Shown: positions 1-45,239 of the stretch, in pieces
Numbering within the stretch: position 1 is the stretch's first letter
How the letters are laid out: each line of letters begins with the position of its first letter
Assembly: GCF_006345805.1 (NCBI RefSeq)
Contig: NC_042997.1
Coordinates: 163,680,001-163,744,000 of the forward strand
Direction of reading: 5' to 3'
Source: Octopus sinensis
Lineage: Eukaryota
DNA length: 64,000 nucleotides
Made by a program: the position numbers and the translations under genes
Notes under the pieces: model-generated
The model's input: only the letters and a program-made list of their open reading frames with translations
Database searches by the model: none
Told to the model about the DNA's origin: nothing

Positions 1-14
1 GCTTCAACACTCAG
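1..14 (+). CDS. SVIL: Supervillin exon, 3' end only (cut by the window edge), encoding ...FNTQ
   Basis: gc TTC AAC ACT CAG|GTATTT donor followed by AT-rich intron. A phase 0 join to exon 17468 gives (R)FNTQ-PVTSEEM, matching the repeated supervillin RxxTQP(I/V)T motif (human RFRTQPITS, RYQTQPVT, recalled from memory). Confidence 0.7.
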
Positions 15-2008: not shown

Positions 2009-3225
2009 TCAGGTTGAGTAAAAAATAAGCAACATTTTGAACCATGAAGAATTTGTACTGGATCTTTGCAGGGTTTTGAATTTAAAAAAAAAATTTTTCT
2101 GAAGTTATCAGATAATACAGACATAGACTTGCCCAAATGCATCAATAAATTAACATTGATATTTTTCTCACTGTTGTTACAATCATCTGAAATAGAACTG
2201 ACAAAGCGCAATCTTTGAACAATTTTGCTATTCAACTTCAAAAAAGGGCATAAAGCAACTGAAACTGCTCACAATATCAATGAAATATTTGGTGAGGAAA
2301 TGCCCAATGAGTTATCAGCTCAAAAATGGTTTAAATGATTTTGCAGTGGAGACCTGAACCTTGAAGATCATGAGCATAGTGGATGCCCATCTGTCATTGA
2401 TGATGTTCAGTTAAAGACGGTCATTGAGAAAGATTCATGTAAAACCACTTGAAAACTGGCAAAAGAACTTCAAGTTAGCCAGAAAACTGCCTACAATCAT
2501 TTGCATGTGATCAGAAAATCAAAAAAGCTCGATAAATGGGTACCACATGATTTGAATGAAAATCAGAAAATGCGCAGATATGAAATTTGCTTGTGACTTC
2601 TCCATAATCAGACCGTTCCATTTCTCGAATGTATTGTAACCTGCAATGAAAAGTGGATTCTGTGCAAACCCAAACACTTCAAAAAGAAGGTTATGGTGAG
2701 TGTTTGGTGATGTACTGCTGGATTCATCCACTATAACTTCTTAAAACCTGGAAAAAAACCATTACTGCAGAAACATATTGCTACGAAATTGTCAAAATGA
2801 ACAAACAATTGCTACTTCGCTGTCCCAGAGGGGTCAACAGAAGAGGGCCAATAATTCTTCATGACAATGCTTGACCACACGTTTCGCTAATGACTCTCCA
2901 GAAATTGAGGGAACTTGGCTACAAGGTTCTTCCCTACACAGCTTATTCCCCAGACTTTTCTCCTACCGACGACCACTTTTTCAAGCATCATGATGCTTTC
3001 CTATGAGAGAAGGAGTTCAAAAATCAAACTGATGCTGAAAATGCATTTAAAGTGTTCATCAGCTCCAGAACTCCAGATATTTATGTTACTGGTATAAACA
3101 AACTTGTAACTCATTGGCAAAAATGTGTTGATTGTAATGGTACTTTGAGGAATAAAATTTCTGCATTGTTGAAATATATGGTGATGAATTTCATGTTTCA
3201 AAATGTTGCTTACTTTTTACTCATC

Positions 3226-3229
<4 letters not shown>
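2009..3229 (+). mobile_element. Full-length, decayed mariner transposon (Tc1/mariner, Hsmar1-like)
   Basis: Inverted termini TCAGGTTGAGTAAAAAATAAGCAACATTTTGAA / TTCAAAATGTTGCTTACTTTTTACTCATCCTGA with TA duplications. Transposase motifs WVPHDL (2537-2554), VTCNEKW, LHDNA and YSPDFSPTDDHFF are present with stops, frameshifts and an ATG-to-ATA change at 2192. Confidence 0.93.
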
Positions 3230-3279
<50 letters not shown>

Positions 3280-3284
3280 CACAC

Positions 3285-3341
<57 letters not shown>

Positions 3342-4498: not shown

Positions 4499-4859
4499 TC
4501 ACTGCCTGGAATCAAACTCAGAATCTTGGGGTTAGTGGCCTGCACTCTTAACCATTACGCCATATACCCATGGGCAATTATGGAGTGAATTTTAGGGCTT
4601 ATGAATTTAATATTTTCCTATTCTTCCTTAATATCAGTTCCCATATGTTATTCATATCTGCACTTGGTCTGCTTAGGGAGGTTGTTGTATCCTAGGATAT
4701 GTGCTGCTTCTTTTAGTTTTTATATTTTCCAATGATGTTCTCTGTCTCTTATTTTAACTTCATCCCACGGGGGGAGGTGGTCTCTATTTTTCCATACATG
4801 ATCACAGAGAACAACTCCCTCTGTGGGATGAAGTTAAAATAATAGACAGAGAACATCAT
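4248..4859 (-). mobile_element. Penelope-like element 3' remnant (GIY-YIG C-terminus and 3' region) with an inverted 5' segment
   Basis: The minus strand from 4803 reads [37 protein letters not shown]. 4823-4859 is an inverted copy of 4732-4768 (36/37). A decayed hammerhead core lies at 4336-4381. Confidence 0.7.
4336..4381 (-). ncRNA. Decayed minimal (dimer-type) hammerhead ribozyme
   Basis: Minus strand GACAC-CUGAUGA-A-GGC...GCC-AAAAC-AUU-GUGUU. Helices I and II are intact, but G12 and the palindromic helix III G appear changed to A, both at CpG sites. Confidence 0.5.
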
Positions 4860-4862
4860 ATA

Positions 4863-4921
<59 letters not shown>

Positions 4922-5400
4922 ATGTATATATGTATATATACATGTATATATGTGTGTATGTATATATGTATATATACATGTATATATGTGTGTGTATATA
5001 TGTATATATACATGTATATATGTGTGTGTATATATGTATATATACATGTATATATGTGTGTATATATATGTATATATACATGTATATATGTGTGTGTATG
5101 TATATATATGTATTATATATATATATATGTATATATATATGTATATATATATATATATTATATATATGTTATATATATATATATTATATATATGTATATA
5201 TATATGTATATATATATGTATATGTATATATATGTATATGTATATGTATATGTATGTATATATATATGTATATGTATATATATGTATATGTATATATATA
5301 TATATGTATGTATGTGTATGTATATAAATATATATATATGTATGTATGTATGTATATATATATGTATGTATGTGTATGTATATAAATATATGTATGTATG

Positions 5401-5487
<87 letters not shown>

Positions 5488-5844
5488 TATGTATATATAT
5501 AGTATGTATATATATGTATGTATATATATATATGTATGTATATATAATATGTATATATATATGTATGTATATATATATATGTATGTATATATATGTATAT
5601 ATATATATTATATATATGTATATATATATATGTATATATATATTGTATATGTATATATATATATGTATATATATATATGTATAATATATATATATTATAT
5701 ATATGTATTATATATATATGTATATATATATATAATATATGTATATATATATATTATATGTATATGTATATATATATGTATATATATAATGTATATGTAT
5801 ATGTATATATATATAATGTATATGTATATATATATGTATATATG

Positions 5845-5909
<65 letters not shown>

Positions 5910-6048
5910 ATATATATATGTATGTATATTATGTATGTATATATATGTATGTATGTATATATATATATTATGTATGTATATATATATATGTATGTATGTA
6001 TATATATATATATATATTATATATATATGTATATATATAGTATGTATG

Positions 6049-6084
<36 letters not shown>

Positions 6085-6309
6085 TAATATATATATATAT
6101 GTATATATTATATATATATATGTATGTATGTATATATATATATGTATGTATGTATATATATATATGATGTATGTATATATATATATGTATGTATGTATAT
6201 ATATATATGTATGTATATATATATATGTATGTATATATATATATGTATGTATGTATATATATATATGTATGTATATATATATATGTATGTATATATATAT
6301 ATATGTATG

Positions 6310-6340
<31 letters not shown>

Positions 6341-6367
6341 GTATGTATGTATATATATATGTATGTA
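4860..6367. repeat. About 1.5-kb compound (TA)n/(TATG)n/(TG)n microsatellite
   Basis: Directly visible; source of the many Y/I/M/C/V pseudo-ORFs. Confidence 0.97.
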
Positions 6368-8414
6368 TAACTTAGAATAACTTAGAAAGGTTTTTGGCCA
6401 GTATTGGCCCAGGCCATGTCTAACTTAATAGCACCACCTGGCGAAGTCTTTCAGTTCAGGATTTGGGCACCAAGGCCCATTCGAGCAGAGAGTTATTGTT
6501 TGCAGAGACATATCCGGGTGTGGGTGGTTTGTCCGGTACTGTTTGAAGGAATTTGTCCAAAGACTTCTTGAATTTTGTGTGGTCAGTTTCTTTTTTGACG
6601 TGTCCTGGTGTAATGTTGAAGAGAGCGGGTCCAATTGAGGTGAAATAGTTGTGCCGTATTGTCGTTATGTGATGCGATTTAGATTTTTGTTGTGGACGGA
6701 TGGCACGTGGTCCAAGCCTTGGATGCATTTTGAAGGTGATGCCAACATCATTCGGACAGTGCTGATGGAATATTTTCCACATCATACAGATAATGTAGCG
6801 TTCACGGCGTCGTTGGAGTGAATACAATTTCAGCTTCTCTAGTCTACCCCAGTAGTCAAGGTCTGACATGCCATCTATCTTTTTTGTGATTGACCTTTGG
6901 GGAGCTTCAATTCTCATAATATTTTGTTTTGTGTAGGGAGACCACAGTGGACAGCAGTATTCAAGGTGGGGTCGGGCAAAAGTGGAGAAGAGAAGGATAA
7001 TAGCGTGGGAATCTCTCGACTGGAAGGTTCTGAGAATCCAGGAACACATTCTGCGGGCCATGTCAACTTTGCTGCTTATATGTGTAGCCCAGCTTATGTT
7101 GTTGTCCACTGTTACTCCCAGGTCTCTGATGTTGTTGGATGCCATGAGAATTTCTCCAGAAGGAAGAGAGTATGGGAGTTTCAGAGCGTCCTCCCTTCCA
7201 AAGTGGATCAGTTCGAATTTGTCTTCATTTAGCAACATGTTATTCTTTTCCGCCCATTGGACAACAGCCAGTAGGTCTGACTGAAGGTTTATTCGGTCAT
7301 CCACGTCATTGATGACCTTCTGGAGCTTGGAATCATCAGCGAAGGTTCTGATGTTGCTGTGTTTGATGGTGTCAGTAATATCATTTATGTAGATGATGAA
7401 GAGAAGTGGGCCCAACACAGTGCCTTGTGGGACACCACTGCTGACTTTGGCTGGGCTGGATTTGACTCCTTCGACTACAACATGTTGGGTTCTGTTAGAG
7501 AGGAAGCACTTGATCCATTGCAGCAGCTTTCCAGTGACACCAATATTGGACAGCTTTCTCAGAAGGATCTTATGATCAACCCTGTCAAAGGCCTTGCTGA
7601 AATCAAGGTAGATGACATCAGTGTTGGAACCCTCTCCCAAGGCTCTCAAAATGTCATCAAAATGATGCAGTAGCTGCGTCAGGCAATCTCTCCCATTACG
7701 GAATCCATGCTGGTTGGGGTTCAGCATATTATGACTCTCAAGGAAGTGAGTCATACGCGATCTCAGAACCCTCTCAAATACCTTGATGATATGAGAGGTG
7801 AGTGAGATTGGACGGTAATTCACGGCAAGCGATTTGTTTCCTTTTTTGAAAACTGGGACAACAGACTGGGATAGAAGGTCTTCTGGTATATATCCAGCAT
7901 CCAATGAGTTCCGCCACAGATTGGCTAGAGGGGGTGCAAGTTGGTTTTGACACATCTTCAAGACACAAGCAGGGAACCTATCGGGACCTACTGCTGAATT
8001 ATGCTTCATTTCCTTTATTGCTGCTAAGACATCAGGAGCGCCAAATGTTATGTCCGATAAAGTGTATTGGGGAGTAACATCACTGATACAGCCCAGATCA
8101 GTCATATCAGGATTGCTGAAAACAGAGCAATATTGTTTCTGCAATATTTCTCCCATGGTTTTGGCATTGTCTTGAAGAGTACCATTTTCATCAATCAGAG
8201 GGCCAACAGTAGAACCAGTGACTCTGTGTTTTTTTGCAAATGAAAAGAACACTTTGGGATTGAGTTTGATCTTCTCAATGGCCCAGGCCTCTTCAGCTCT
8301 TCGCTGACTATTGATGATAGACATCATGTTGTTTTGGAGTTTATGTTTTTTAATCTCTAGCGACGAGATGGCAGTCAGGTTGGTGTGTTGCTGTTGACAG
8401 TATTTCAGCATGTA
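6368..8414 (-). mobile_element. 5'-truncated CR1-clade LINE, young
   Basis: Uninterrupted reverse transcriptase ORF; short 3' UTR with a GGCCA-ATAC-TGGCC hairpin; (TTCTAAGTTA)2 tandem tail at 6368-6387; endonuclease domain missing. Confidence 0.92.
6456..8414 (-). CDS. LINE ORF2 reverse transcriptase and C-terminal domain (partial)
   Basis: Motifs YRPISLTS, QHGFRNGRDCLTQL, YLDFSKAFDRVDH, GVPQGTVLGPLLF and FADD; no stops across about 650 codons. Confidence 0.95.
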   Translation of the reverse strand, partial: YMLKYCQQQHTNLTAISSLEIKKHKLQNNMMSIINSQRRAEEAWAIEKIKLNPKVFFSFAKKHRVTGSTVGPLIDENGTLQDNAKTMGEILQKQYCSVFSNPDMTDLGCISDVTPQYTLSDITFGAPDVLAAIKEMKHNSAVGPDRFPACVLKMCQNQLAPPLANLWRNSLDAGYIPEDLLSQSVVPVFKKGNKSLAVNYRPISLTSHIIKVFERVLRSRMTHFLESHNMLNPNQHGFRNGRDCLTQLLHHFDDILRALGEGSNTDVIYLDFSKAFDRVDHKILLRKLSNIGVTGKLLQWIKCFLSNRTQHVVVEGVKSSPAKVSSGVPQGTVLGPLLFIIYINDITDTIKHSNIRTFADDSKLQKVINDVDDRINLQSDLLAVVQWAEKNNMLLNEDKFELIHFGREDALKLPYSLPSGEILMASNNIRDLGVTVDNNISWATHISSKVDMARRMCSWILRTFQSRDSHAIILLFSTFARPHLEYCCPLWSPYTKQNIMRIEAPQRSITKKIDGMSDLDYWGRLEKLKLYSLQRRRERYIICMMWKIFHQHCPNDVGITFKMHPRLGPRAIRPQQKSKSHHITTIRHNYFTSIGPALFNITPGHVKKETDHTKFKKSLDKFLQTVPDKPPTPGYVSANNNSLLEWALVPKS

Positions 8415-8854
8415 TGACAAATGAGAAATGAGCCGTCAATACATGATGAAGAGGCTCACACTGATGTCAAACTTTCAGCTTCAGGTATACATATATATAG
8501 ATTGTTAGCCACTACAGACATATATGTATATATATATATGTATGTATATATGTATGTATATATATACATGTATGTATATATATATGTATGTATGTATATA
8601 TATGTATATGTTTGTATATGTATGTATATGTTTGTATATGTATGTATATATATGTAAGTATGTATGTATATATATGTATATGTTTGTATATGTTTGTATA
8701 TGTATGTATATGTTTGTATATGTATGTATATATATATATATATGTATGTATGTATATATATATGTATATGTTTGTATATATATATGTGTGTGTGTGTGTG
8801 TATACACACAAACTCACACAATGTATCTGTCTATCATCTCCCTTTCTATCTAAG

Positions 8855-8885
<31 letters not shown>

Positions 8886-8890
8886 ATATA

Positions 8891-8923
<33 letters not shown>

Positions 8924-8968
8924 CATAGAAGTAAATATATGGCCCAACGAAGTACCGATATTTACTGG

Positions 8969-9026
<58 letters not shown>

Positions 9027-9268
9027 TATATATAAATATATATATAGGGACAGTTTACGAAAAAAACAAAAGGCGAAGACAGGTGGTGTACAAAACAAAC
9101 AGATGTATTAGTATAATACATCTTTCTACAGAAAGGGACACAAAAAACAAGGAGATAAAAAATGTCTGTAGTGGCTAACAATCTATATATATGTATACCT
9201 GAAGCTGAAAGTTTGACATCAGTGTGAGCCTCTTCATCATGTATTGACGGCTCATTTCTCATTTGTCA
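8415..9268. repeat. Perfect 107-bp inverted repeat (8415-8521 / 9162-9268) around a microsatellite-rich spacer
   Basis: Base-by-base comparison shows the arms are identical; the left arm abuts the LINE 5' truncation point. Confidence 0.95.
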
Positions 9269-9650: not shown

Positions 9651-9949
9651 CTATATATATATATATAGAGAGAGAGATAAATAGATAGATAAATATACAT
9701 ACATACATACATACATACATACATACATAGATAAGTTTTGGCCAGTATTGGCCCAGGCCTGAGGAGATGTAAAATATTGCACCTGTTTAAAATTTTACCT
9801 GATGATGGTGGATTGTATATTACATAACCTATGAATGCAATAATAAAATTCTATTTTTGTAAATTTTAGAAGCTATTTGCATTTATATATATATGTGCAC
9901 AAACACACACTCTTACATATATATGTATATGTGTGTGTGTATGCATATA

Positions 9950-9997
<48 letters not shown>

Positions 9998-10000
<3 letters not shown>

Positions 10001-10215: not shown

Positions 10216-12529
10216 AAAGATACAAAATAGCTGGTGTAAAATTCCAGTGTATTCATCTTGTACTAGAAACATTATTATTATTGATTATTTGTATTATTCT
10301 AGAAATTACTTAATTAAAAAAAAAATGTTTTTGTTTGTGTGAGTCAAGGCTGTGGGCAATTTGAGCTATTATGATAGCCTCTTCATAGTAGAAATGAAAC
10401 ACTTATCTTTGAGGGATTCCTGCTGGATTGGAGGCCACTTCATTGCAAGGTTATCTCCAATTGTTGGTACCCATGTTTTGCTGAGTGGACTAAAGCAGTG
10501 AGAAAGGAAGTGCTTTTCTCAAAGACACAATGCACATTTTGTTCTGGGAATAGAATATATAATCTTATGATCTTGAGCCAACATGCTAACAATTGGGTCA
10601 TGCATCCTGTATTTAGCATTAATTTAGTTTATGTGAATATTTGTACCTAGGAATGTGCATAAACATCTGACTTGAAGATATTGGTGTAAAATATGAAACA
10701 TATTACTTTCTAAACAATATTGTCGTAGAAAATTTTAAAAAATCATGTGGGGAAAAAAGCTAAAATGATATATGTACATGATCAAATTTCATCTTCTGTT
10801 TTAAATTTTGTATACTTACATTTCTTCTAAAGTCATTGAGTGTGGTGTATTTCATTAGGTGCTAACTGATAAAAAGCTTCTCATTAATGCCTGTCAAACT
10901 CCCCAAATTATTTTTATGAAACAGCAATTTTGGGATTATTTTATACTGAACAAAGATTATGTAGATAAAGAATATAATTTGCTATTGAGTCCTTATTACA
11001 CATTAGGAAATTGGATTTATTGGAAAAAAGAAATGAAAACCAATATTATATAAGTAATAAATTATTGAGCACAAGTTTATTGAGTAACTGTATGTTCTTA
11101 AGAAATTAGTAACTAATATAAAACCATTTCACATTATTTATTAGATAAAGAAATGAAAGCTAATTTTATGTAGAAATCAAATATTATTTTGGTAGACTTT
11201 TTAACTGTTCTTATAAAAATAACTGATTAGTATAACTATCTTAACTAATGCTTTGCTTTCACAATATTCCTGTTTTCTTTGCTTCAACTACTTGATAAAT
11301 CAAAGATATATGACTTTAATTAAATTTATTCTTGAGATGTATAAACTTATATTTTTATTTTAGCCTTATTTAATTTACATTTACTCATAATCAGTTATTA
11401 GACTGTGTAATGTGAAGACAGCTGATTCTGAATATCTGGTTTGTGCTTTAAATTACAAACTGTTGAGAGAAAGGAGTACATTCCAGTTAGCTGCTATGCA
11501 AATTAAGAAATTGGAAACTCAGCAGAAGAGATAACTTTTAAGTTATGGTCTGAAAGTTTTTAGGTACAATTTGAAAATGATATTATGTAGAAGAATCAGC
11601 TGTCTAGTACCAGGCAAATTATTATTATTTAGTGTAATAAAATTTAAATACTCTCTGAAAGGATAGGGTGAAAGACTAATAGTTAATAAAATTAGTATTT
11701 TGAGTTGGTCTATGAAACTTATGCATACCTTTTCTAAGATGACTAATAAATTCATATGAGGGTAGTGTTACAGCAATAGAAAAGCTATCTAATTGCAACA
11801 TTTTGTAATGGATATAAACAATTAAAAATGGATTGAAAGTATTCTAGGAAAAAAAACCCAATTCAGTTATATTATGCAAATATAAAAATTTGCAAAGCAC
11901 ATCCTTCCTGAAGTCTGGAGAAATAGATACAAAAAGACAATTAATAATAAAGTATTCTGAATTCGAATATTTAATGCCAAATGTGGCATTTATATATAGT
12001 TCAGTTGAGATGCAGATAGAGCAAAATCTATGAAGATTGTTTGTGAACAATTTGTTTGAAAATTTCCAAATAGAAGCAAACTTAAGAAAGAGGCAAGTGT
12101 ATTTGAGACTTGAAACTATATTGAAATAATGTTATCAGGGTTTTACTCAGAGATTACTGTGAGTTCAATATATACTTTTGTACGAAGGTGCCACATGACA
12201 TTTTAGTGTAATTATCTTGGGCGTATATCTGTAAATATTGTATGAACATCTCAAATCAATAAAGATTTTAGAGAATATTACTAATTATTGTTTTATTTTC
12301 CTGTGTATCAGTTATCAAATAAACATATAAATTATATATTTGATAAGGATTTTTCAGTGCAAAGCTTCAAGATTTGAACAGAAAAATTCTAACCATCACT
12401 ATAACTTTGGCTGCCTCACCATAACTTTTGAAATCACAATTTAACATCAATAACAGTTTTCTTTGCTTTTACTCTCTCTCTTTTGCTGTTTGGATATGAT
12501 CATGCACCACTGCATTTTTCCATTTCCAG

Positions 12530-12553
12530 GCTCAAAAAAATAGGGTTTCTCAG
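12530..12553 (+). CDS. SVIL: Candidate 24-nt supervillin microexon (AQKNRVSQ)
   Basis: tgcatttttccatttccag|GCTCAAAAAAATAGGGTTTCTCAG|gtaact. Phase 0-0 and open; regenerates RVSQ-PVT with the next exon; TGC motifs upstream and TGCATG downstream. Confidence 0.65.
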
Positions 12554-13714
12554 GTAACTGCTTTCTCTCTATTCACAGGCATGTACAAAGCTCATGACCT
12601 ATTTCACTAATTTTAGCTAGCACTGGATGCATGTTTGTGCTTAATTTATGCTCTTCTGTAATGATGGAATGTATTTGACATTACTGTAAGGAATAACATC
12701 TTCAATCAACTCAAATAATGTGATTTACAAGGAAGGTTAATTTGAAGGTTCATTACAAACATGTTTCTTCAAATGACTTCAAATAGAATTGGAATTATAA
12801 ACATATATTACCTTGAATACATTAAATTGTTTCTAAACTGGAACGCCAATGATGTAAAAGTTTTTATATGATGCCTGTAAACAATTATTGTTTTTGTTTT
12901 TCTTTCAACCTGTAAAACAGAGGTGTACTATATATTTACATGTTATACACATATGGCTGAAATATAACCCTTTATTAATAGCTTCAATATTGTCGTACAC
13001 ATCTCTCACATTATTACTATCATCATTATCAGCATCGTCAAAATCTTGTTGTGATTCATTTAACATCTGTTTGTTCATATCTCTGTGAGTTAGGTTACAC
13101 CTATCCTATTATGTTAATAATGTGAACTACAAAAGTGGGGTTGGTTGCTATTTTCAGTTTGATTGATTGAAGCCATGCCCTAGAGTGTAGGGAAGTACTT
13201 GTAGCAGAGTTTTAGATTATTGTTTTTGCACTTAGTACAATAACCACTTATCTACTATGCCTTTATACAATTCTACAAAATGAAAACAAACAACAAATTA
13301 CTTAGTAAATAAAAGAAGTATTTGTAAGAAAGAAATAATTATGTTTAGAAGATACATATGCCAATCGAGAAAGGCTGTTGACAATAATATTAGGAGAGTT
13401 CAGGTTGACTGACACATTCCTTTAGTTATTAGAAAATGAAAAATAAAAAGGGGGAATTTTAACTTTGATAGGAAAAAAATTTGAACAATTTTTAATTAAT
13501 ATGTTGGAAAATAATGTTAATGCATCTTATTAAAGGTCATTTGAATTTGGAGAAGTGTATAAAGTATTTGAGTGAGAAAATTCTATACATCATGAAAGTG
13601 TATTTAGTGAAGAATAATTATATTTAGTAAAATATTACTACTAAGGGGAGTTAGTGAAAGCATGTCTGTTTAATCATGAGCAGATGAACATTGAGAAGAT
13701 AACAACTGAAGGGA

Positions 13715-17467: not shown

Positions 17468-17714
17468 CCTGTTACTTCTGAAGAAATGGAGAGTGTGTTT
17501 CGTATTTCTCCTTTGGCAATGAGCCTTGTAAAACCACCAGATCCAGAAATTTTGAAAGGATTGCCATTAAATGCTCAAAGAGAGCTCGTTGCCCAGCATG
17601 CAGAAGCTTGTTTATCTCAACAAGGGTCCAGACCAAACTCACGTCCAGGATCACAATCTGGTTCCCGAAGAGGATCTCTTGAAGAACATGAGCAAAGTAA
17701 ACTAGAAACAAATG
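17468..17714 (+). CDS. SVIL: Supervillin exon PVTSEEMESVFR...KPPDPEILKGLP...SRRGSLEEHEQSKLETN
   Basis: Acceptor attttag| at 17467 and donor AATG|gtattg. 247 nt, phase 0 to 1, open frame (ORF 17486 in the track); RRGSLE motif as in vertebrate supervillin. Confidence 0.9.
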
Positions 17715-33449: not shown

Positions 33450-33921
33450 AAATTCTCAGAATGGCTGATATCGAAAATACACAAACTGTTGATTCAAATA
33501 AACAATTTAATAAAGAAGTATTGATTAAAAGCAGTATAGAAACAGAAAATATAAGTGTCTTAAAGTCAAAAGAAACAAAGTATCAGGAGACACATAAAAA
33601 ACTTAATAGTGAAGCCATAAGTGTTTCAAAACTTAACAAAACTGACTCTGGAAGTGTTCAAACAACATCAGTCACAAGTACAAAAATGAAAGAACACCGA
33701 AGTATACTTATAAAAGACCAGAATGGAGATCAGCCTCGAGGAATTTTGAAGAAAGACATTAGCTTTGATTATAAAACAGAAGATATTAAACCAAATTTAG
33801 ACAGTTCAGATAAAGAAAACTCAACACCAGTTCTTAAAAAACAATCAATGTCAACTAAAGTAGTATCTAGATCTTTATCTTATGAAGAATCAAAAGCAAT
33901 TGAAAACCAGTCTTTAGAAAG
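33450..33921 (+). CDS. SVIL: Supervillin exon (E)ILRMADIENTQ...RGILKKDISF...ENQSLE(R)
   Basis: ttttctctttcag| acceptor and AAAG|gtaaga donor. 472 nt, phase 1 to 2, matching both neighbouring exons; low-complexity S/T/E/K-rich linker. Confidence 0.9.
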
Positions 33922-34391
33922 GTAAGATATGATTATTATTATTAATAGTAATAACATTGTAGAAATATTAATCACTTACCTTGTTAAAATTTTAGAAATG
34001 AAAACATTTATTTATCTGTATATTTTTTATTAGGTAGTGGAGTAACAGGATTTGTAGCTTAACAGACTTTTAGTTATGTCACTTTACATTCTGAGTTCAA
34101 ATCCTTCTAAGGTTTGATTGTGCCTTTCAATATCAGAGGATGAAAATATAAATAACAATTAATAATAATAATAACTAGCTGGACCCCTGAAAAATTCCCA
34201 GAAAATATAAAAAAATGTAAGCATCTGTAAATTGTGTACTGGTGCTATGGTACAACCAATAACTATATAAGCCAACCAAAATATCTCAGTTACACAAACG
34301 TAAACAAAATTACTATTTAGCCTTAAAATACATCGTACATATTCAAAGAACCTTCTTGGTTTAGTGATACCAGAAGTTCTTCCGGTATTTT

Positions 34392-34712
34392 TTTTATTCT
34401 TTTACTTGTTTCAATCATTTGATGGTGGCCATGCTGAAGCACCACCCTTTAGTCGAAGAAATCGACCCCTGGACTTCCTGTAAGCCTGGTGCTTATTCTA
34501 TCAGTCTTTTCTGCCAAACAGCTAAGTTATAAAAAATGGGGATGGAAACACACCAACATTGGTTGTCAAACAATAGTGGTGGTGGGACAAACACAGACAC
34601 ATACACACACATAAAAATATAATATATATATATATATGATGGGCTTCTTTCAGTTTCCATCTACCAAATTCTCTCACGAGGCTTTGGCCAGCCTGAGGCT
34701 ATAGTAGAAGAC
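34392..34712 (-). mobile_element. tRNA-derived SINE (family 1), 5'-truncated
   Basis: Tail and central block match the 32077 copy; the head is missing. Confidence 0.8.
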
Positions 34713-35234
34713 ATTCTATAAAGTATAGAGTTGAATTTCATGTAGCCACCTGTTGGCAACTTTTCTGCCCTGCCTATTTTGTAGTGGGTGTAACCCACTT
34801 TTCTGGGCTCTTTTTCACAGTTACACCCTGTTCAAAATTTGCACTAGTTTTTGTATGAAAAAAAGGTAGTGGGGGAAGAGGTTTGTTTGTAGTTTGTTGA
34901 GAAAATGTTAAACATGCCTGAAAAAAACATCGTCTTTCCCCCCCCCCCCCAACTAAAAGACAGGAAGAACTATGAAAGAAAGTGAAAAAGGAGATGGGGG
35001 AAAGAACAGAGAAATAACAGTCAATTGTTCTAGAACTCCCAGAATAAAAACATTAACATCTGAAAGACTTTCTCTCTATTCATTACTAAATGTCTTTCCT
35101 TCTTCTTCATTGTTAAAAGTAAAGAAGCTAGAAAAGATGGATTGTATTTCAGTCTAATTGTCAGTGTAAATGACTAAGGCTTTCCTTTCTCTGTCTCTAT
35201 TATTTCACGCCTTTTCTCTATGGTTAAGAGAGTG

Positions 35235-35533
35235 AAGGTGTGTGGCTCAGTGGTTAGGGGTATTCAGCCCATGATTGTAAAGTCATGAGTATGTGTTTTT
35301 GAGCAAGGTACTCTACTTCACCTTGCTGCAGTCCACTCAGCTGGCAAAAATGTTGTAGCAGTAATTCAAAGGGACCAGCCTTGTCACATTCTGTGTGAAG
35401 CTGAATCTCCCTGAGAACTACCTTATGGCATACATATCTGTGGAGTACTCAGCCACTTGTGCGTTAATTTTATGAGCAGACTGTTCTTTGATCAGATAAA
35501 CAGGAATCTTGTTGTCATAACTGATGGAATGCC
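35235..35533 (+). mobile_element. tRNA-derived SINE (family 3), with a partial second copy at about 35850-36005
   Basis: gtgtggctcagtggttag tRNA-like head; the internal segment gctgaatctccctgagaactac is repeated at about 35930. Confidence 0.65.
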
Positions 35534-36259
35534 ATTTTTAAAAAAGAGTGAAAGAAGAAGAGATATTCCATATTGTATGGCAAAAATGTCATGTTTTCAG
35601 AATAAGCAGTGAAAGTTAAGACGAAATAATTGCTATTCTGTGATGTATTTACCCTCGTCTCACACTTAGTTTGATAACAACAGCCTGCATATTGGTGTTT
35701 ATCTGGGGGCTTGGCCTCCAGATCTGCGAGACCCACAAATGCTGCTGTTAGGACTGGATTAACTCCTATAGTGATCTTAATGACTAAAAAGATTTTCCTG
35801 CCCCTATATAGGATCTTTTTTCATTTTCTTCCAACCACTTGAAGGTTTATCTTGCTCCAGTTCACTCAGCTGGTCAAAATGAGTTGTAGTTGTAACTCAA
35901 AGGGTCCAGCCTTGTCATATTCTGTGTGAGGCTGAATCTCCCTGAGAACTACATTAATGATATGCATGTCTGTAGAGTACTCAACCATTTGTGAGTTAAT
36001 TTTATCCTTGTGTGGTAATGAAAAATGAAAGTGACTTTATATTTGCTGTGTATATGTATCTATGTATCAACTTTTCTTTGGATCTATGTATCTACTGTCT
36101 CTCTCACTTTCTCTCTTTCTCTTTCACTTCCCCTGTGTCCCTCCTCTCTCTCACTTTTAATTTAACAATGTGTGTATGTATCTATGTATCTACTTTTCTT
36201 GCAATGTGTTAAACATTTAAAAACACAAAACGAGTGCTGTCAACACTCACTGTCTCTTT

Positions 36260-36835
36260 CACTTTGAATTTGAACTCAGAACATAAGGACAGATGAAATG
36301 TTGCTAAGCATTTTGCTTGGTATCCTAATGATTCTACTAGCTCATCGCCTTTAATAAAAATAATAATGATAATAATTCTTTCTACTAAAGACACAAAGGC
36401 TGAAACTTGGTGGAGGGGACTAGTTGATTACATTGCACACCCCCATCCCCAAGTGTTTCACTGGTACTTAATTCATTGACCCTGAAAGGATGAAACGCAA
36501 AGTCAACCTCGATGGAATTTGAACTAAGAACCTAGTGGCAGCTGAAATACCGCTAAGCTTTTTGCCTGGTATGCTAACAATTCTGCCAACTTGCTACCTT
36601 AATAATAATAATAATAACAATCCTCTCTACTATAGCTACAAGGCCTGAAATTTTTGGGGAAGGAACTAGTCAATTACAGTGACCCGAGTGTTTCACTAGT
36701 AGTTAATTTATCGACCCCAAAAAGATGGAAGGTAAAGTCGACCTTGGCGGAATTTGAACTCAGAATGTAGTGACAGGCAGAATACCACTAAGCACTTCAT
36801 CTGGCATGCTAATAATTCTGCCAGCTCACTGCCAT
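36260..36835 (-). mobile_element. Three head-to-tail family-2 SINE copies separated by (AAT)n
   Basis: Repeated gaatttgaact(c/a)agaa and ctaagc...ctgcca/ctagctc segments at about 36260-36352, 36375-36600 and 36618-36835. Confidence 0.75.
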
Positions 36836-37570
36836 AAAAATGATAATGATGATGATGATAATAATAATAATAATAATGAATTAAAATGACTATGGTTCTC
36901 TCACAAATTTGTTATTTTTGTATATGTAAGAGATCATTTTTTTCTTCCTGTCATCCAATGTTGTATTTATTCAAGAAATTGGAGCAGAGCAGCACCCTCA
37001 AAGGAAGAAAAAAGAAATCATGTTAAATAGGATAAAGTAGCTTTATTAGTGACTTATCTTTGTAACCAAGAAGTTTTACTAAAAACACTTAAAATTGAGC
37101 TTGAAGAAAAACCTTAGAAATCAACTCTAACTTTAAAAACTAGAATGTATAATTCCTTGCAGTAAATACCCCCGCCATAGACATATTGTGACCCAGCAGA
37201 AATCGCATTGTATAGCTGACCTGGTTTACATAGTTAAAAATTCATACTTTTTATGCTTGTGAGGATAATATAGTTGAGAGGAATGACAGTGCTTCAGACT
37301 AAGTGAATTTAGTCAGTCTCACTATGTCTGCAGTGAAGTTCCATCAGGATTACTTATCCTTTGGTAAAATATATACTAGTAAAAGTTTGTGTGCATGTGT
37401 GTGTGTGTGTGTGTGTGTACCTTATGATACACACACAAGCACACACATTCATATACATATGTTGGTAGGTGATGATGCAGAGAGGGGGTACTCAGTACAA
37501 ATGTAGAGTGTAGCAGTACACTTAAGCTGGTCCAGTGCAACAGGCCACTGGATTGGCTTCAATAACTATA

Positions 37571-38265
37571 TCATCATCACCATCATCATCATCATCATCG
37601 TTTAATGTTCACTATCTAAACTGGTGTGGGTTGGATGGTTTGACTGAGGACTGGCAAGCCAGGAGTCTGCACCAACCTGATCTGGCAAGGTTTCTATAGC
37701 TGGATGCCCTTCCTAACGCCAACCACTCCTACAGTGTAGTGGATGCTTTTAGTGTGCCACTGGCACGGGAGCCTGCCAGGTGGCACTGACATTGACCATG
37801 CTCAAATGGTGCCTTTTTACATGCCAACAGCATGGGTATCAGTCAGGCGGCACTGGCATTGGTCACACTTGAATGGTGTGCTTTATGTGTCACCGTCACG
37901 GGAGCCAGTCAGGCAGCACTGGCATCAACCATGCTTGAATAGTGCTTATTACATGCCAGCACAGGTTCCAGTCAGGTGGCACTGGCATTGGCTACGACTA
38001 TGATTTCTCTTGACTCAACAGGTCTTCTCAAGCACAGCATGTTGCCTGATGATTGAAGAGTACTTTTAAATGGGCTAATTAGCAACACTAGCATCAACCA
38101 CAGCTACGATCTCACTTGGCTTGCCAGGTTCTCTCAAGCACAGCATATCTCCAAAAGTCTCGGTTGCTTGTCATTGTCTCTGTGAGGCCCAACATTTGAA
38201 GCTTGTGCTTCACCACCTTATCCCATGTCTTCTTGGGTCTATCTTTTCCACAGGTTCTCCCACCA
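37571..38265 (-). mobile_element. RTE-clade LINE 3' fragment
   Basis: Minus-strand C-terminal peptide GRTCGKDRPKKTWDKVVKHKLQMLGLTETMTSNRDFWRYAV; 3' UTR with about 66-bp tandem units; (GAT)n tail. Confidence 0.85.
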
Positions 38266-38314
38266 CACACACATGCATATATATGTTTATGTGTGTGCCT
38301 AAATATACATATAC

Positions 38315-39181
38315 AGTGAGTGATCAACAATTTTTATGATATACACATTCAGTCATACATACAAAAACCCACATCCATCCATCCCCCACATACACACAAC
38401 ATATATAAACCAAATGACAAACTGATTTAAGCCGGACATACCAGTCATATGTTTGTTCCTGTGTAGGAGTTCATGTGTGCGTGTTTGTAAATGTATGTCT
38501 GTGTTTGTACGAATGAGCATGTATGTTGATTATTCAGCTTGTCACCATGTGAGCAAAGAGATGCTGATGTTAGCATTCCTTGTTAAGGTATTGACCAGTT
38601 GCTCTGGTAAGAGTTGTCAACAGGAAGAACAACAGGTAGTAAAATTCTGCCATAAATAACTCCCCATCTAACTCATGCTATCATGGAGAGATGGAAGTTA
38701 AACAAATGAATGAACTATATATGTTGAATACAGGTGTGCATTTATACATATGCATACACACACACACATATATATACACACATTGATGCAAATGTACATA
38801 TACATTCATTTGTTTAACTTCCATCTCTCCATGATAGCATGAGTTAGATGGAGAGTTATTTATGGCAGAATTTTACTGCCTGTTGTTCTTCCTGTTGACA
38901 ACTCTTACCAGAGCGACTGGTCAACATCTTAACAAGGAATGTTACCATCAGCATCTCTTTGCTCACATGGTGACAAGCTGAATAATCAACATACATACTC
39001 ATTCGTACAAACATGCACACAGGTACTCCTGCACAGGAACAAACATATGACTGGTATGTCCGGCTTAAATCAGTTTGGCATTTGGTTTATATATGTTGTG
39101 TGTATGTGGGGGGATGGATGGATGTGGGTTTTTGTATATATGACTGAATGTGTATATCATAAAAATTCTTGATCTCTCACT
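38315..39181. repeat. About 870-bp palindrome (arms 38315-38712 and 38803-39181, spacer about 90 bp)
   Basis: Arms align end to end with scattered substitutions and one indel of about 20 bp; the spacer is a TA/CA microsatellite. Confidence 0.95.
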
Positions 39182-40370
39182 CATGTTCCTGTTAAGTCTT
39201 TATCTATAGCCCTTTTCCTCTTCATTAACCTTTCTTTATCTCTCACATTCTCTTGTTCACTTTCTTGTTATACCAGGTGGTGTACTACATCACCTGAATA
39301 ACAAAGGCTGGCAGTGGTTCTTCCATATTCAGTCTTCCTTATTTTCACATTCTACCATTCAACCTCTCTTCCAGCATGACACCTGTTTAATGAGAGGTGG
39401 CAATGAATCTGTCCATATCCAACACTCCTAGCACACTACCCTTCTTTACGGCTAGCCATCACTATTCCCTTATTAGCATCTATCACTATCTCCCTATTGC
39501 AATGTCCATATGTATTGCTATTCAGCATCTCTATCTCTGTCTCTCTGCCTCTGTATCTCTCTCATTCATCATTTCCTCCCCTCACAAATTGTTTACATAC
39601 ACCTCTCTCACATTTCCTTTACTCTTTCTTCTAACACCTTCTTTACACTCTATCACTTTGTCCCCACCCACTATTATGCTGCATATTGCTGTTTTTCTTT
39701 TCAATCTCCTTCCCATTAATCAAATAGCTGTCTATCATTGTCCTATTTTATTTTTTCAGCAATCACTCTATCCCTCTCCTCTCTCTTTACTGAACCTGAT
39801 CCTTCTGTTACTGCTCTCTCTTTTTTCACCCATTCACTTTGGTTCTTACTCTATCATCACTTTCTCTTCTCTTCAGCCTCTTATCATATTACCTGGAATG
39901 AACAGAGACAAAGCAGAGTAGAGAAGACTCTTTAGTCTTACAGAGGATAATGCAATCTTTCTAATGCTGGTGCTATGATAAAATGCACTTTGTAAAGTGG
40001 ATGGCATTTGGAAGGGCATCCAGCTAGAGAAATCATGCCAAAAATGGACTGTTCAAGTGAAACTATTGAAAAGGGCAGTACTTTCACACAAGAACTGACT
40101 TGAGCAGTGATGACCTGTCTGACACATACCAGCATGGAAAGCAGATGTAAAATGATGATGATGTTATGCTTAGAAAAATAATTAGAGTTTAAACATTTGA
40201 AATTTAATAGTTGTACAAATTGTGTTTTAGCTGATAGCTGCCATTGTTTTTTGTTTTTTTTACACAACTTTTATTCGTATGTGGAGTTAAAGAGAATTAA
40301 AAGAGAGTGTGTATGTATAGTGATGTAATGACTACTTATGACTTCATAGTTGTAATTTCATTTATATATT

Positions 40371-40765
40371 ACTAACAGTATTGCCCGGCGTTGCTCGGGT
40401 TTGTTTCGACCCTTTAGAATTGGAACTTTTGAAAAGTAAAACTTTTGCATTATGTCGCTTGGTATTCTCTTTAAGTGAACATTTTTCTGGTTAAAATACA
40501 CCGAAAAATGGCGATACAGCAGTAAAAAAAATCATAAAAAATAGGGATTTTCATAGAAAAAAAGCACCTATTTGATGTAAATAATTTTTGGTGTTAACAT
40601 GGTCTGATTTGAATTTTTTCTTCTACGGAAGGAAGTGCAAGCCTTCTTCTATCATACTCTCAATTTTGGTCAACTTGCGCCGCAGGGTCTCGGAGGAGAT
40701 AGTGTTAGTTGAAAGTTACCAAACCTGCCATACACTGACAACTTCAGCTTTATATATATAGAGAT
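40371..40765 (+). mobile_element. Non-autonomous Helitron/Helentron (DINE/HINE-like) element
   Basis: Starts ACTAACAGTATTGCCCGGCGTTGCTCGGG (5' hairpin) and ends TTTATATATATAGAGAT between T residues; CpG-rich relative to the flanks. Confidence 0.55.
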
Positions 40766-41426
40766 TTTCATTTATCAGGAAAGTTATTTGTGATTCTCTT
40801 AGATTTAGAAACATTTGTTTTAGACTATCTTTTTCAGTTCTTTAAGATTTATAATGAATTAACAATATTTCCAGAACTATAAATATAATATCTTGTTTGT
40901 GAAATGCCAATTTCCTATCTGTTAATTTAATGTCTTAAAATTTTACTTTGTTGTTGTTTGTTCCTTCTCAAGCCATGCTTGGCTTATAAGGGCCAGTTTC
41001 CTGGTTTCATTGGTGTTTAGGTTCCCCACCTGGACAGGATGTCAGTCCGTTGCAGGTGAGCTGCTTGATGCTGGAGGAAAGGAGTAAGAAAAAGTGGCGA
41101 AATAGTTAGCAGAAATTTGCCATTACTTTCTGCTGGAGCCACATAGAACTTAGGTGTTTCGCTCATAAACATACACATCACTTAGTCTGAGATTTGAACC
41201 TGCAATCCCTCGACCGTGAGTCTGCTGCTCTAATCTCTAGGCCATGTGCCTCCAAAATTTTACTATTCTTGTAGTAAAATGTAAACAGTTGAAAATATTA
41301 ATTGAACTGCTATCTAATTAATCTGCTTTGGTCCTTTATATCAATTAATATAGTTAAAAGGTTTTAATAATATTTCATAGAAATTTTATGTATGATCTCT
41401 TTTGTATCTATACTGTTTATGTTAAT

Positions 41427-41841
41427 AGGTGTAGGTGTGTCTGTGTGGTAAGAAGTTTGCTTTCTGTCCACATGGTTCCAGGTTCAGTCCCACTGTATAG
41501 TACCTTGGGCAAGTGTCTTCTACTATAGCTTCAGGCTGACCAAGACTTTGTGAGTGGATTTGGTAGACAGAAACTGAAAGAAGCCCATCATATATATACA
41601 CACATAGATATATATGCATGTATGTGTGTGTGTCTTTGCATCTTGTGTTTGTTTGACAACTGGTATTGCTTAACAACAGGTATTGGTGTTTTTATGTTCT
41701 TATAACTTAGTGGTTCAGCAAAAGAAACCAGGCTTAAAGATAAAATAAGTACTGGAGTTGAGCCATTCGACTAAAATTCTTCAAGGCAATGCTCCCAGCA
41801 TGGCCGCAGTCTAATGACTAAAACAATTAAAAGACAAAAAG
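41427..41841 (+). mobile_element. tRNA-derived SINE (family 1)
   Basis: Same head, central block and tail as the 25423 copy. Confidence 0.85.
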
Positions 41842-42070
41842 TATATATGTTTACTTTGGTTATTAATAAGCAATTTAAACTAATAATAAAGCTTCCTCTT
41901 ATTAAACAAATATGTATAGCAATCCTTAATAACTCTCTTCTAATGCAGCAAATTCAGTAAACATTTAAAATTGTTTAGAGTGTTAGTACTAATTTGTGTG
42001 TGTGTATATATATAGATATGTGTGTGTGTGAGTGTATATATATATATATATATATAGATATGTGTGTGTG

Positions 42071-42125
<55 letters not shown>

Positions 42126-44076: not shown

Positions 44077-45055
44077 TCATCATCATCATCATTGTCGTTT
44101 AACGTCTGTTTTCCATGCTGGCATGGGTTGGATGGTTTGATTGAGGTTTGGAGAGCCAGTGGCTGCACCAGGCTCCAATCTGATCTGGCAGTGTTTCTAC
44201 AGCTTGATGCCCTTCCTAACGCCAACCACTCCGAGAGTCAGTCAGGTGGGCCTTGCATCAATCACATTTGGATAGTGCTTATTACCTGCCACTGGCACGG
44301 GGGCCAGTCAGTGGGTACTGGCATCAGCCATGTTCAGATGGTGCTTTTTATGTGCCACTGGCACGGGGGCCAGTCAGGTGGTCCTGGCATCGATCATGTT
44401 TGGATAGTGCTTTTTACTAACCTCCACCAAGTATATCATATTGCCTGATGCATCAGGGGTACTCTTAACTGGGCTGGACATGCGTGGCTGCGATCTCACT
44501 TTAGTTACTGGGTATTCTCAATCACAGCATATCTCCAAAGGTCTCGGTCTCTTGTCATTGAGGCCCAATGTTTGAAGGTCATGCTTCACCACCCCATCCC
44601 ATGTATTCCTGGGTCTACCTCTTCCACAGGTTCCTTCCACAGTTAGGGAGTCGCACTTCCTCACAGAGCTGTCCTCATCCATACGTAACACATGACCTTA
44701 CCAGTGCAATCGTCTCTCTTGCACACTACACTTGATGCTTTTTATGCCCAACTTTTATCTCAGGGTGCTCACACTCTGTCATGTATGCACACTGACATTA
44801 CACATCCAGCAGATCATACTAGCTTCATTTCTTTCAAGACTACGCATGTCCTCAGCAGTCATGGCCCGTGTTTCACTGTTGTGTAGCATGGCAGTTCACA
44901 CACATGCATCATACAGTCTACTTTTCATCCTGAGCAAGATGCCCTTAGTTGCCAGCAGAGGTAGGAGCTCCTTGAACTTTGCCCAGGCTATTCTTATTCT
45001 AGCTGCTACACTCTTAGAGTAACCACCCCCACTACAGACTTGTTCGCCTAGTGTT
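44077..45055 (-). mobile_element. RTE-clade LINE, 5'-truncated and decayed
   Basis: The minus strand reads ...SVAARIRIAWAKFKELLPLL...RLYDACV*TAMLHNSET...GRGRPRNTWDGVVKHDL with stops; same 3' UTR repeats and (GAT)n tail as 37571. Confidence 0.88.

Positions 45056-45198: not shown

Positions 45199-45239
<41 letters not shown>

What the first reader, a model, noticed from the sequence alone, without database searches (positions are those of the whole stretch)
12500..12635. 24-nt microexon that splits and rebuilds the supervillin RxxTQPVT motif
Seen: the upstream exon ends ...FNTQ| and the downstream exon starts |PVTSEEM, so the conserved motif straddles a 17.4-kb intron. Inside that intron is a perfect AG/GT-bounded 24-nt exon encoding AQKNRVSQ. 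Inclusion destroys (R)FNTQPVT but recreates RVSQPVT, changing the acceptor residue from Thr (R at -3) to Ser (R at -2). TGC triplets at 12503 and 12511 sit just before the pyrimidine tract; ACTAAT (12606) and TGCATG (12628) lie downstream. Established: upstream UGC marks Srrm3/4 (eMIC)-dependent neural microexons, downstream UGCAUG is an Rbfox enhancer, and ACUAAY is bound by QKI/How. Inference: a neural or muscle splicing switch that rewires kinase specificity at a supervillin motif.
Basis: partly seen in the sequence, partly recalled or inferred. Interest (0 to 1): 0.78.

Follow-up and report, generated by a model that had tools for sequence, protein, structure and literature searches.

The report
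Likely neural microexon in octopus supervillin
A 24-base mini-exon with unusually good splicing signals sits in a long intron of an octopus supervillin-like gene. If used, it would insert eight amino acids into the middle of a highly conserved short motif, but no RNA or cross-species evidence could be obtained here.

Summary
The sequence facts are all correct. The upstream exon ends FNTQ|GT at 14/15. A 24-nt AG/GT-bounded open exon (12530-12553) encodes AQKNRVSQ. The next exon starts PVTSEEM at 17468.

The candidate is a statistical outlier. It is the only one of 594 in-frame candidates in the intron with even moderate splice scores. It is also the only one of its quality on either strand of the 64-kb window.

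Its acceptor region matches the published signature of SRRM3/4 (eMIC)-dependent microexons. That signature is a distal CUCUCUCUCU tract, three UGC motifs and a 71-nt AG-free zone. Two GCAUG motifs lie within 80 nt downstream.

The gene is a supervillin-like gene: the Argonauta ortholog is 3342 aa with gelsolin repeats and a supervillin-type headpiece. R-x-x-T-Q-P-[VI]-T-x-[DE]-E is a real motif, usually present five times per protein.

However, "rebuilds the motif" overstates the case. R(-3) and T(0) are essentially invariant in 34 instances, and the included form (N-3, R-2, S0) breaks both. No annotated homolog has an insert, and one non-cephalopod mollusc has no such exon.

Transcripts and close-relative DNA were unreachable. 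Verdict: probably a real, lineage-specific, neural-type microexon (about 0.6). The kinase-rewiring idea remains speculation.

The parts
3..14 (+). Last 12 nt of the upstream coding exon (TTC AAC ACT CAG = FNTQ). The donor is CAG|GTATTT at 15. The exon ends in phase 0.
   Evidence: It matches ...KNRKVASRFNTQ|PVT... of the Argonauta ortholog P0011.
12468..12472 (+). UUUAC, the only yUnAy branch-point-like site inside the AG-free zone, about 58 nt upstream of the acceptor AG.
   Evidence: That it acts as the branch point is inferred.
12472..12481 (+). CUCUCUCUCU alternating pyrimidine tract. It is the distal half of a UCUCUC[N1-50]UGC-type intronic enhancer and also a PTB-type site.
   Evidence: The signature is described.
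12484..12513 (+). Three UGC motifs (12484, 12503, 12511) between the CU tract and the acceptor AG.
   Evidence: Three or more TGC in the 50 nt upstream occurs at about 2.2% of AGs in the window.
12457..12527 (+). AG exclusion zone of 71 nt upstream of the acceptor.
   Evidence: A zone of >=70 nt occurs at 181 of 7106 AGs (2.5%).
12514..12529 (+). Proximal pyrimidine run and acceptor: auuuuuccauuuccAG.
   Evidence: Acceptor PWM is 8.87. Confirmed exons of the gene score 1.7, 4.6, 6.9 and 9.2.
12530..12553 (+). Candidate 24-nt cassette microexon GCUCAAAAAAAUAGGGUUUCUCAG, encoding AQKNRVSQ. It is phase 0 to phase 0 and has no stop.
12554..12559 (+). Donor CAG|GUAACU, matching the CAG|GUAAGU consensus at 8 of 9 positions.
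   Evidence: Donor PWM is 5.01. Confirmed donors of the gene score -2.8, 0.6, 2.9, 6.2 and 9.75.
12579..12583 (+). GCAUG, 26 nt downstream of the donor (Rbfox-type pentamer).
12606..12611 (+). ACUAAU, a QKI/How core or branch-point-like sequence. No UAAY half-site lies within 20 nt.
   Evidence: It occurs by chance downstream of 5.6% of GTs.
12628..12633 (+). UGCAUG, 75 nt downstream of the donor (Rbfox hexamer).
   Evidence: Two or more GCATG within 100 nt downstream occurs at 1.0% of GTs.
17468..17714 (+). Downstream constitutive exon, PVTSEEMESVFRISPLAMSLVKPPDPEIL...KLETN(G). The acceptor is cauuuuAG and the donor is AUG|GUAUUG.
   Evidence: It is 95% identical at the amino-acid level to P0001 and 86% to the Argonauta protein P0011.

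Best explanation
Window 12530-12553 is most likely a genuine, lineage-specific (octopod or cephalopod) alternative cassette microexon of a supervillin-like gene. It is built like the SRRM3/4 (eMIC)-dependent neural microexons.

Proposed mechanism:
- A distal branch point (about 12471) is followed by a CUCUCUCUCU tract, three UGCs and a 71-nt AG-free zone.
- This would make the 3' splice site poorly usable by default and open to PTB-type repression.
- It would become usable when an eMIC-containing Srrm protein is present.
- The near-consensus donor and two downstream GCAUG (Rbfox-type) sites would help define so short an exon.

Skipping gives the ancestral ...SRFNTQ|PVTSEEM... . Inclusion inserts AQKNRVSQ exactly between Q and P of the fourth of five repeated R-x-x-T-Q-P-[VI]-T-x-[DE]-E motifs. 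The PVTSEEM half is then preceded by KNRVSQ instead of SRFNTQ. R(-3) and T(0) are essentially invariant in natural copies. The included isoform therefore most likely disables or re-specifies this one copy and leaves the other four intact. It does not faithfully rebuild it.

Shown: the sequence, frame, relative splice-signal strength, rarity by chance, motif conservation and gene identity.

Inferred: that the exon is spliced at all, tissue specificity, factor dependence, and any effect on phosphorylation or binding.
For: - Exact AG/24 nt/GT structure, phase-preserving and stop-free.
- It is the only one of 594 in-frame candidates in the intron passing acceptor >=4 and donor >=0. It is the only one at its own scores on both strands of the window.
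- None is comparable in about 22 kb of introns from other molluscs.
- Markov simulation gives 0.025 candidates per 64 kb at relaxed thresholds, and 0 of 907 windows with all features.
- Only 2 of 7106 AGs combine UCUC...UGC, an AG-free zone >=70 nt and acceptor >=6. The other one has no donor.
- These are the features published for eMIC-dependent exons.
- Two GCATG within 80 nt downstream, seen at 1% of GTs.
- The region is single-copy in the window and shows no similarity to any known protein, so it is not an obvious transposon piece.
- The insertion point lies in a conserved short linear motif of a cytoskeletal scaffold, which is typical of microexons.
Against: - No transcript or junction evidence of any kind was obtainable.
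- The only annotated octopod ortholog found (Argonauta hians GAB1597773.1) and all eight other homologs read across this junction have an uninterrupted SRFxTQP[VI]T.
- A non-cephalopod mollusc whose whole 1.7-kb orthologous intron was read has no such exon.
- Conservation in close relatives could not be examined.
- Splice scores come from generic PWMs, with thresholds chosen after seeing the candidate. Markov shuffles understate real sequence heterogeneity.
- Strong pseudo-exons do occur in long introns.
Confidence: 0.6

Rival explanations
1. Chance pseudo-exon: a fortuitous pairing of a good acceptor and a good donor in a 17.4-kb AT-rich intron that the spliceosome never, or essentially never, uses.
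For: - No transcript evidence.
- Absent from the Argonauta protein model and from every annotated homolog.
- Absent from the orthologous intron of another mollusc.
- The peptide's resemblance to the motif is weak once the donor-forced CAG (Q) is discounted.
- The candidate was picked by a reader who was looking for exactly these features.
Against: - The expected number of such pairs by chance is about 0.007 per intron at relaxed thresholds and about 0.0006 at its own acceptor score.
- None occurs elsewhere in 128 kb of real sequence.
- Independent flanking features each occur at 1-2.5% of control sites: UCUC...UGC, the 71-nt AG-free zone, and two GCAUG.
Confidence: 0.25
2. The exon is real, but not an eMIC or neural switch. 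One possibility is a young, low-inclusion exonisation with no selected function. The other is a muscle or glia-type exon driven mainly by Rbfox and QKI/How, echoing the muscle-specific isoforms of vertebrate supervillin.
For: - Downstream GCAUG x2 and an ACUAAU core.
- Rbfox and QKI act in muscle as well as in neural tissue (general knowledge).
- No sign of the exon outside cephalopods, so it may be young.
- The included peptide breaks the invariant motif positions, which would be tolerable if inclusion is low.
Against: - The acceptor architecture is the one described specifically for eMIC-dependent exons.
- The QKI bipartite element is incomplete.
- A near-consensus donor and a strong acceptor are not expected of splicing noise.
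Confidence: 0.13
3. Recursive-splicing or decoy exon, used only as an intermediate to remove the 17.4-kb intron in two steps and not retained in mRNA.
For: The intron is long, and the strong acceptor lies about 12.5 kb into it.
Against: Recursive sites need a 5' splice site regenerated at the junction. Here the junction would be CAG|GCUCAA, which is not a donor. The exon is in frame and open, which an intermediate does not require.
Confidence: 0.02

Closest known systems
SRRM3/SRRM4 (eMIC-domain)-dependent neural microexons of bilaterians
   Same: - Length of 24 nt, within the 3-27 nt class, and a multiple of 3.
- Distal branch point and pyrimidine tract with alternating UCUC, and UGC motifs between that tract and the AG.
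- Long AG exclusion zone and a near-consensus 5' splice site.
- Location inside a conserved short motif of a cytoskeletal protein.

The signature is as described. Its presence here is shown.
   Different: - Inclusion, neural specificity and Srrm dependence are untested.
- Many canonical microexons are deeply conserved. This one is absent from a non-cephalopod mollusc and from all annotated homologs seen.
- The proximal pyrimidine run next to the AG gives a fairly strong acceptor, whereas fly eMIC exons have very weak ones.
Rbfox-enhanced cassette exons (downstream (U)GCAUG)
   Same: A UGCAUG at +75 and a GCAUG at +26 downstream of the donor. That is the position from which Rbfox promotes inclusion (general knowledge).
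   Different: There is no evidence of binding or of motif conservation. One hexamer within 100 nt occurs by chance at 5.4% of GTs, and two pentamers at 1%.
Tissue-specific isoforms of vertebrate supervillin (archvillin, smooth-muscle archvillin)
   Same: Same gene family: long N-terminal region, gelsolin repeats and a supervillin-type headpiece. The N-terminal scaffold region is altered by alternative splicing. From memory, the human R-x-x-T-Q-P-[VI]-T copies lie in or near the muscle-specific inserts. This is a lead only.
   Different: The vertebrate alternative exons are large cassettes, not microexons. None is known to me that splits a TQ|PVT junction. Not tested here.
MYPT1/MBS inhibitory phosphorylation motif (RRS-T696-QGVTL)
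   Same: The supervillin motif R-x-x-T-Q-P-V-T-L-E-E-[IV]-Q-E-A-D resembles MBS ...SRRSTQGVTLTDLQEAEK. In MBS that Thr is a Rho-kinase site, and the phosphopeptide inhibits PP1. This supports the idea that T(0) with R(-3) is a phospho-acceptor.
   Different: This is sequence resemblance only. Supervillin has P where MYPT1 has G. No phosphorylation or PP1 data were found for the supervillin motif. The microexon form (R at -2, S at 0) departs from both.

Membership tests
eMIC (SRRM3/4)-dependent microexon | Exon of 3-27 nt that preserves the reading frame | tested here: met
   24 nt, phase 0 to phase 0, no stop.
eMIC (SRRM3/4)-dependent microexon | UGC motif(s) close to the 3' splice site, between the branch point or pyrimidine tract and the AG | tested here: met
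   UGC at 12484, 12503 and 12511. Three or more in 50 nt occurs at about 2.2% of AGs. The feature is as described.
eMIC (SRRM3/4)-dependent microexon | UCUC-rich pyrimidine tract displaced from the AG (bipartite UCU_CUC[N1-50]UGC enhancer) and a long AG exclusion zone | tested here: met
   CUCUCUCUCU at 12472-12481 and an AG-free zone of 71 nt. Only 2 of 7106 AGs combine these with acceptor >=6.
eMIC (SRRM3/4)-dependent microexon | Neural-restricted inclusion that depends on an eMIC-containing Srrm protein | not testable with these tools
   No RNA-seq or perturbation data are available. No transcript-derived protein spanning the junction was found.
eMIC (SRRM3/4)-dependent microexon | Conservation of the exon and its flanks in related species | tested here: inconclusive
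   Absent from the 1.7-kb orthologous intron of a non-cephalopod mollusc. DNA of close relatives at this site was unreachable.
Rbfox-enhanced exon | (U)GCAUG in the proximal downstream intron | tested here: met
   GCAUG at 12579 and UGCAUG at 12628. Binding and conservation were not tested.
QKI/How-regulated exon | Bipartite element ACUAAY-N(1-20)-UAAY | tested here: not met
   Only the core ACUAAU at 12606 is present. The next separate UAAY is at 12642, more than 20 nt away. The core alone occurs downstream of 5.6% of GTs.
Recursive splice site / RS-exon | A 5' splice site regenerated at the junction of the upstream exon with the start of the exon (AG|GURAGU) | tested here: not met
   The exon starts GCUCAA, so the junction CAG|GCUCAA is not a donor.
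Supervillin (villin/gelsolin superfamily) | Long N-terminal region, C-terminal gelsolin repeats and a villin-type headpiece closest to supervillin's | tested here: met
   - The ortholog P0011 (3342 aa) has Gelsolin at 1.5e-28 and VHP at 2.1e-14.
- Its headpiece best matches supervillin 2k6m (1.4e-16), against villin at about 1e-8.
- The window exons 17468-17714, 33450-33921, 46751-46924 and 60294-60547 are collinear with P0011 residues from about 1985 to about 2380.
- The C-terminal domains themselves lie outside the window.
MYPT1 Thr696-type kinase/PP1 motif | R at -3, phospho-acceptor Thr, then Q-G-V-T-L. The Thr is phosphorylated by Rho-kinase-type kinases and the phosphopeptide inhibits PP1. 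| tested here: inconclusive
   Only sequence resemblance was established. No biochemical data on the supervillin motif were found.

The most novel reading that the evidence does not exclude
Supervillin's five R-x-x-T-Q-P-[VI]-T-x-[DE]-E repeats are MYPT1-Thr696-like modules, that is, Rho-kinase-family phospho-sites that can engage PP1/myosin phosphatase. Octopods would then have evolved a neuron-specific microexon that switches off or re-addresses one of the five. That would give neurons a differently wired actomyosin scaffold. It would be a cephalopod-specific addition to the ancestral bilaterian microexon programme.
Probability: 0.1. Interest if true: 0.7.

Novelty: new member of a known kind. 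Interest (0 to 1): 0.42.

Why it matters
If the exon is used, it would be a clear case of a lineage-specific microexon that cuts a deeply conserved short linear motif exactly in two. That would be useful for asking how cephalopod nervous systems expanded the ancestral Srrm/eMIC splicing programme. It would also give a natural "motif-off" isoform with which to probe the function of the supervillin R-x-x-T-Q-P-V-T repeats, for which I found no description in the searchable literature. If it is not used, it is a good example of how convincing a pseudo-exon can look. It would then be a caution for sequence-only microexon calling.

Tried and rejected
1. Transcript-derived proteins across the junction. 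A query that included the microexon returned only single-exon genomic ORF fragments. A long query timed out. A 530-aa query was swamped by low-complexity word matches.

2. Relatives' DNA at the microexon.
   - All six-frame open frames from 11.75-13.35 kb, concatenated as one query, gave no hit.
   - The window's own ORF is not on record.
   - A relative about 90% identical exists in Logan runs SRR11869384/391/394, but only a 1.4-kb contig around the PVT exon is indexed.
   - A degenerate-codon pattern scan of the metagenome contigs found nothing.

3. Microexon search in other molluscs' introns found none.

4. A second acceptor with the same UCUC/UGC/AG-free signature, at 39877, was rejected. 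It has no usable donor and lies in pyrimidine-rich, repeat-like sequence.

5. Recursive-splicing reading was rejected, because no donor is regenerated.

6. Transposon origin. There is no second copy in the window and no protein similarity. A non-coding repeat cannot be excluded.

7. Literature. Nothing was found on octopus supervillin, LOC115211517, or a TQPVT motif in supervillin. Run accessions could not be tied to species.
Full report
**1. What is in the sequence**

- The window opens in the last 14 nt of a coding exon: ..TTC AAC ACT CAG = FNTQ, with donor CAG|GTATTT at 15.
- At 12530-12553 lies GCT CAA AAA AAT AGG GTT TCT CAG (AQKNRVSQ). It is preceded by ...auuuuuccauuuccAG and followed by GUAACU.
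- At 17468 the next exon begins CCT GTT ACT TCT GAA GAA ATG (PVTSEEM...) after cauuuuAG. It ends at 17714 (AUG|GUAUUG).
- The intron is 17,453 nt.
- TGC at 12503 and 12511, ACTAAT at 12606 and TGCATG at 12628 are all present.

**2. Gene identity and exon structure**

- An exhaustive HMMER search with the PVT exon found a 3342-aa protein, P0011. This is GAB1597773.1, "LOC115211517 isoform X3 [Argonauta hians]".
- It is 86% identical over the exon. It reads ...KNRKVASRFNTQPVTSEEMESVFRISPLAMSLVKPPDP....
- P0011 has gelsolin repeats (1.5e-28) and a villin headpiece (2.1e-14). The headpiece is closest to the solved supervillin headpiece 2k6m (1.4e-16). So "supervillin-like" is justified.
- Collinearity with P0011 fixes four further window exons at 17468-17714, 33450-33921, 46751-46924 and 60294-60547.
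- A relative 95% identical in protein (about 90-93% in flanking intron) exists in Logan runs, so the window is from an octopod.

**3. The motif**

- In nine lophotrochozoan homologs there are 34 instances of [ST]-x-P-[VI]-T, usually five per protein.
- R is at -3 in 33 of 34. T is at 0 in 34 of 34, although S was allowed by the search. E is at +7 in 34 of 34.
- The copy at this junction is always SRFxTQP[VI]T and is never interrupted.
- The phase-0 intron between Q and P is shared by a second cephalopod and by other molluscs.
- Copy 1 of the motif (e.g. WRRRTQPVTLEEIQEADS) resembles the MYPT1/MBS peptide SRRSTQGVTLTDLQEAEK. The Thr in that peptide is a Rho-kinase site, and the phosphopeptide inhibits PP1. 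I found no paper that describes the supervillin motif.

**4. Is the microexon more than chance?**

I scored sites with generic metazoan donor and acceptor matrices, typed from general knowledge.

| Site | Candidate | Confirmed exons of the gene |
|---|---|---|
| Acceptor PWM | 8.87 | 1.7 to 9.2 |
| Donor PWM | 5.01 | -2.8 to 9.75 |

- Of 594 in-frame, stop-free AG..GT candidates (3-60 nt) in the intron, it is the only one with acceptor >=4 and donor >=0. It is the only one on either strand of the whole window that reaches its own scores.
- No comparable candidate exists in about 22 kb of orthologous introns from other molluscs.
- In 907 simulated 64-kb windows (3rd-order Markov), 23 candidates of <=27 nt reached acceptor >=6 and donor >=5. 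Two reached its acceptor score, and none had the flanking features.
- These numbers are approximate. The thresholds are post hoc, and Markov sequence is smoother than real sequence. Even so, they put the chance expectation well below 0.1 per window.

**5. Flanking architecture**

The literature describes eMIC/SRRM3/4-dependent microexons as follows:
- a strong branch point and pyrimidine tract displaced from the AG;
- a bipartite UCU_CUC[N1-50]UGC enhancer;
- a long AG exclusion zone;
- a strong 5' splice site.

Here the layout is UUUAC at 12468, then CUCUCUCUCU at 12472-12481, then UGC at 12484, 12503 and 12511, with no AG for 71 nt.

Frequencies among the 7106 AGs of the window, both strands:

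| Feature | AGs |
|---|---|
| AG-free zone >=70 nt | 181 |
| UCUC...UGC | 114 |
| Both features | 7 |
| Both, with acceptor >=6 | 2 |

The other site with all three features, at 39877, has no donor.

Downstream there are two GCAUG, at +26 and +75. That occurs at 1.0% of GTs. The ACUAAU is an isolated core with no half-site in range, and it is weak evidence (5.6% by chance). The 700 nt around the exon are single-copy in the window and hit no known protein.

**6. What inclusion would do**

- The spliced product reads ...FNTQ-AQKNRVSQ-PVTSEEM....
- The Q is the CAG of the donor consensus, and PVT belongs to the downstream exon. The real coincidences are therefore only S at 0 and R at -2.
- Measured against 34 natural copies, the included form lacks both invariant upstream positions (R-3, T0).
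- I therefore read inclusion as disabling or re-addressing this one copy, not as rebuilding it.
- Whether T(0) is phosphorylated rests only on the MYPT1 analogy. It also rests on the fit of R-[F/Y/S]-x-T-x-P to basophilic-kinase and 14-3-3 mode-1 consensus motifs, which is general knowledge and was not tested.

**7. What could not be done**

- No transcript-derived sequence across the junction exists in the searchable protein sets (one search timed out).
- Relatives' DNA at the microexon could not be fetched.
- The Argonauta model lacks the insert. It is, however, a single model named after an Octopus isoform, and annotation pipelines often miss microexons, so this is only weak negative evidence.
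- A non-cephalopod mollusc with a fully read 1.7-kb orthologous intron has no such exon. If real, the exon is therefore lineage-specific.

**8. Verdict**

- The best explanation is a genuine, eMIC-type, probably neural, alternative microexon (confidence about 0.6).
- The main rival is a chance pseudo-exon (about 0.25).
- A further rival is a real exon that is non-neural or functionless (about 0.13).
- The functional story about kinase specificity is a hypothesis only.
- It is a new member of a known kind, and interest is moderate.

Noticed in passing
P0011 residues 1678, 1749, 1858, 1983, 2246, and the homologs P0015-P0024. Window exon 46751-46924 holds the degenerate fifth copy (SRHHLTEPVTSCEKQEA).: Supervillin-like proteins of molluscs and other lophotrochozoans carry, in most cases, five copies of R-x-x-T-[QLM]-P-[VI]-T-x-[DE]-E-hydrophobic-x-x-A. 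Copy 1 closely resembles the MYPT1/MBS Thr696/697 Rho-kinase/PP1-inhibitory peptide (RRSTQGVTLTDLQEAEK). No paper describing this was found.
   Followed up: partly
window 6459-8435 (- strand): A 659-codon open frame with a reverse-transcriptase domain (RVT_1, 2.6e-31) lies antisense in the same intron. It is probably a fairly young non-LTR retroelement insertion.
   Followed up: partly
window about 2219-3003 (+ strand): Frameshifted remnants of a mariner/Mos1-type transposase (HTH_48, 2.2e-12) in the first part of the intron.
   Followed up: partly
window 4858-6369, also 3229-3340, 8520-9046, 9945-9998: Very long, imperfect (AT)n / (TATG)n microsatellite arrays. The largest is about 1.5 kb with about 765 copies. 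They produce the many spurious YIYI.../CVCV... open frames.
   Followed up: yes
window 15, 17715 (donors); 60293 (acceptor): Several constitutive splice sites of this gene are weak by generic matrices. The donors CAG|GTATTT and ATG|GTATTG score 0.6 and -2.8, and the acceptor before 60294 scores 1.7. They are weaker than the candidate microexon's sites. Either octopod consensus differs from the human-like matrices or these exons rely on other signals.
   Followed up: no
window 39760-39877 (+ strand): A 115-nt AG-free, CU-rich stretch with a strong acceptor-like AG at 39875-39876, in the intron 33922-46750. No usable donor follows. It is probably part of a repeat and not an exon.
   Followed up: partly
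window 12606-12617: ACUAAU is followed directly by UUUUAG. This looks like a branch point plus a 3' splice site about 55 nt downstream of the microexon donor. It could be a decoy acceptor or just chance.
   Followed up: no
L006 and L007 (ENA ERZ25084518, two contigs): The same mollusc assembly holds two contigs with an identical PVT exon and identical near flanks but different upstream sequence. One has an RT/endonuclease insertion. These are probably haplotypes or a recent duplication.
   Followed up: no
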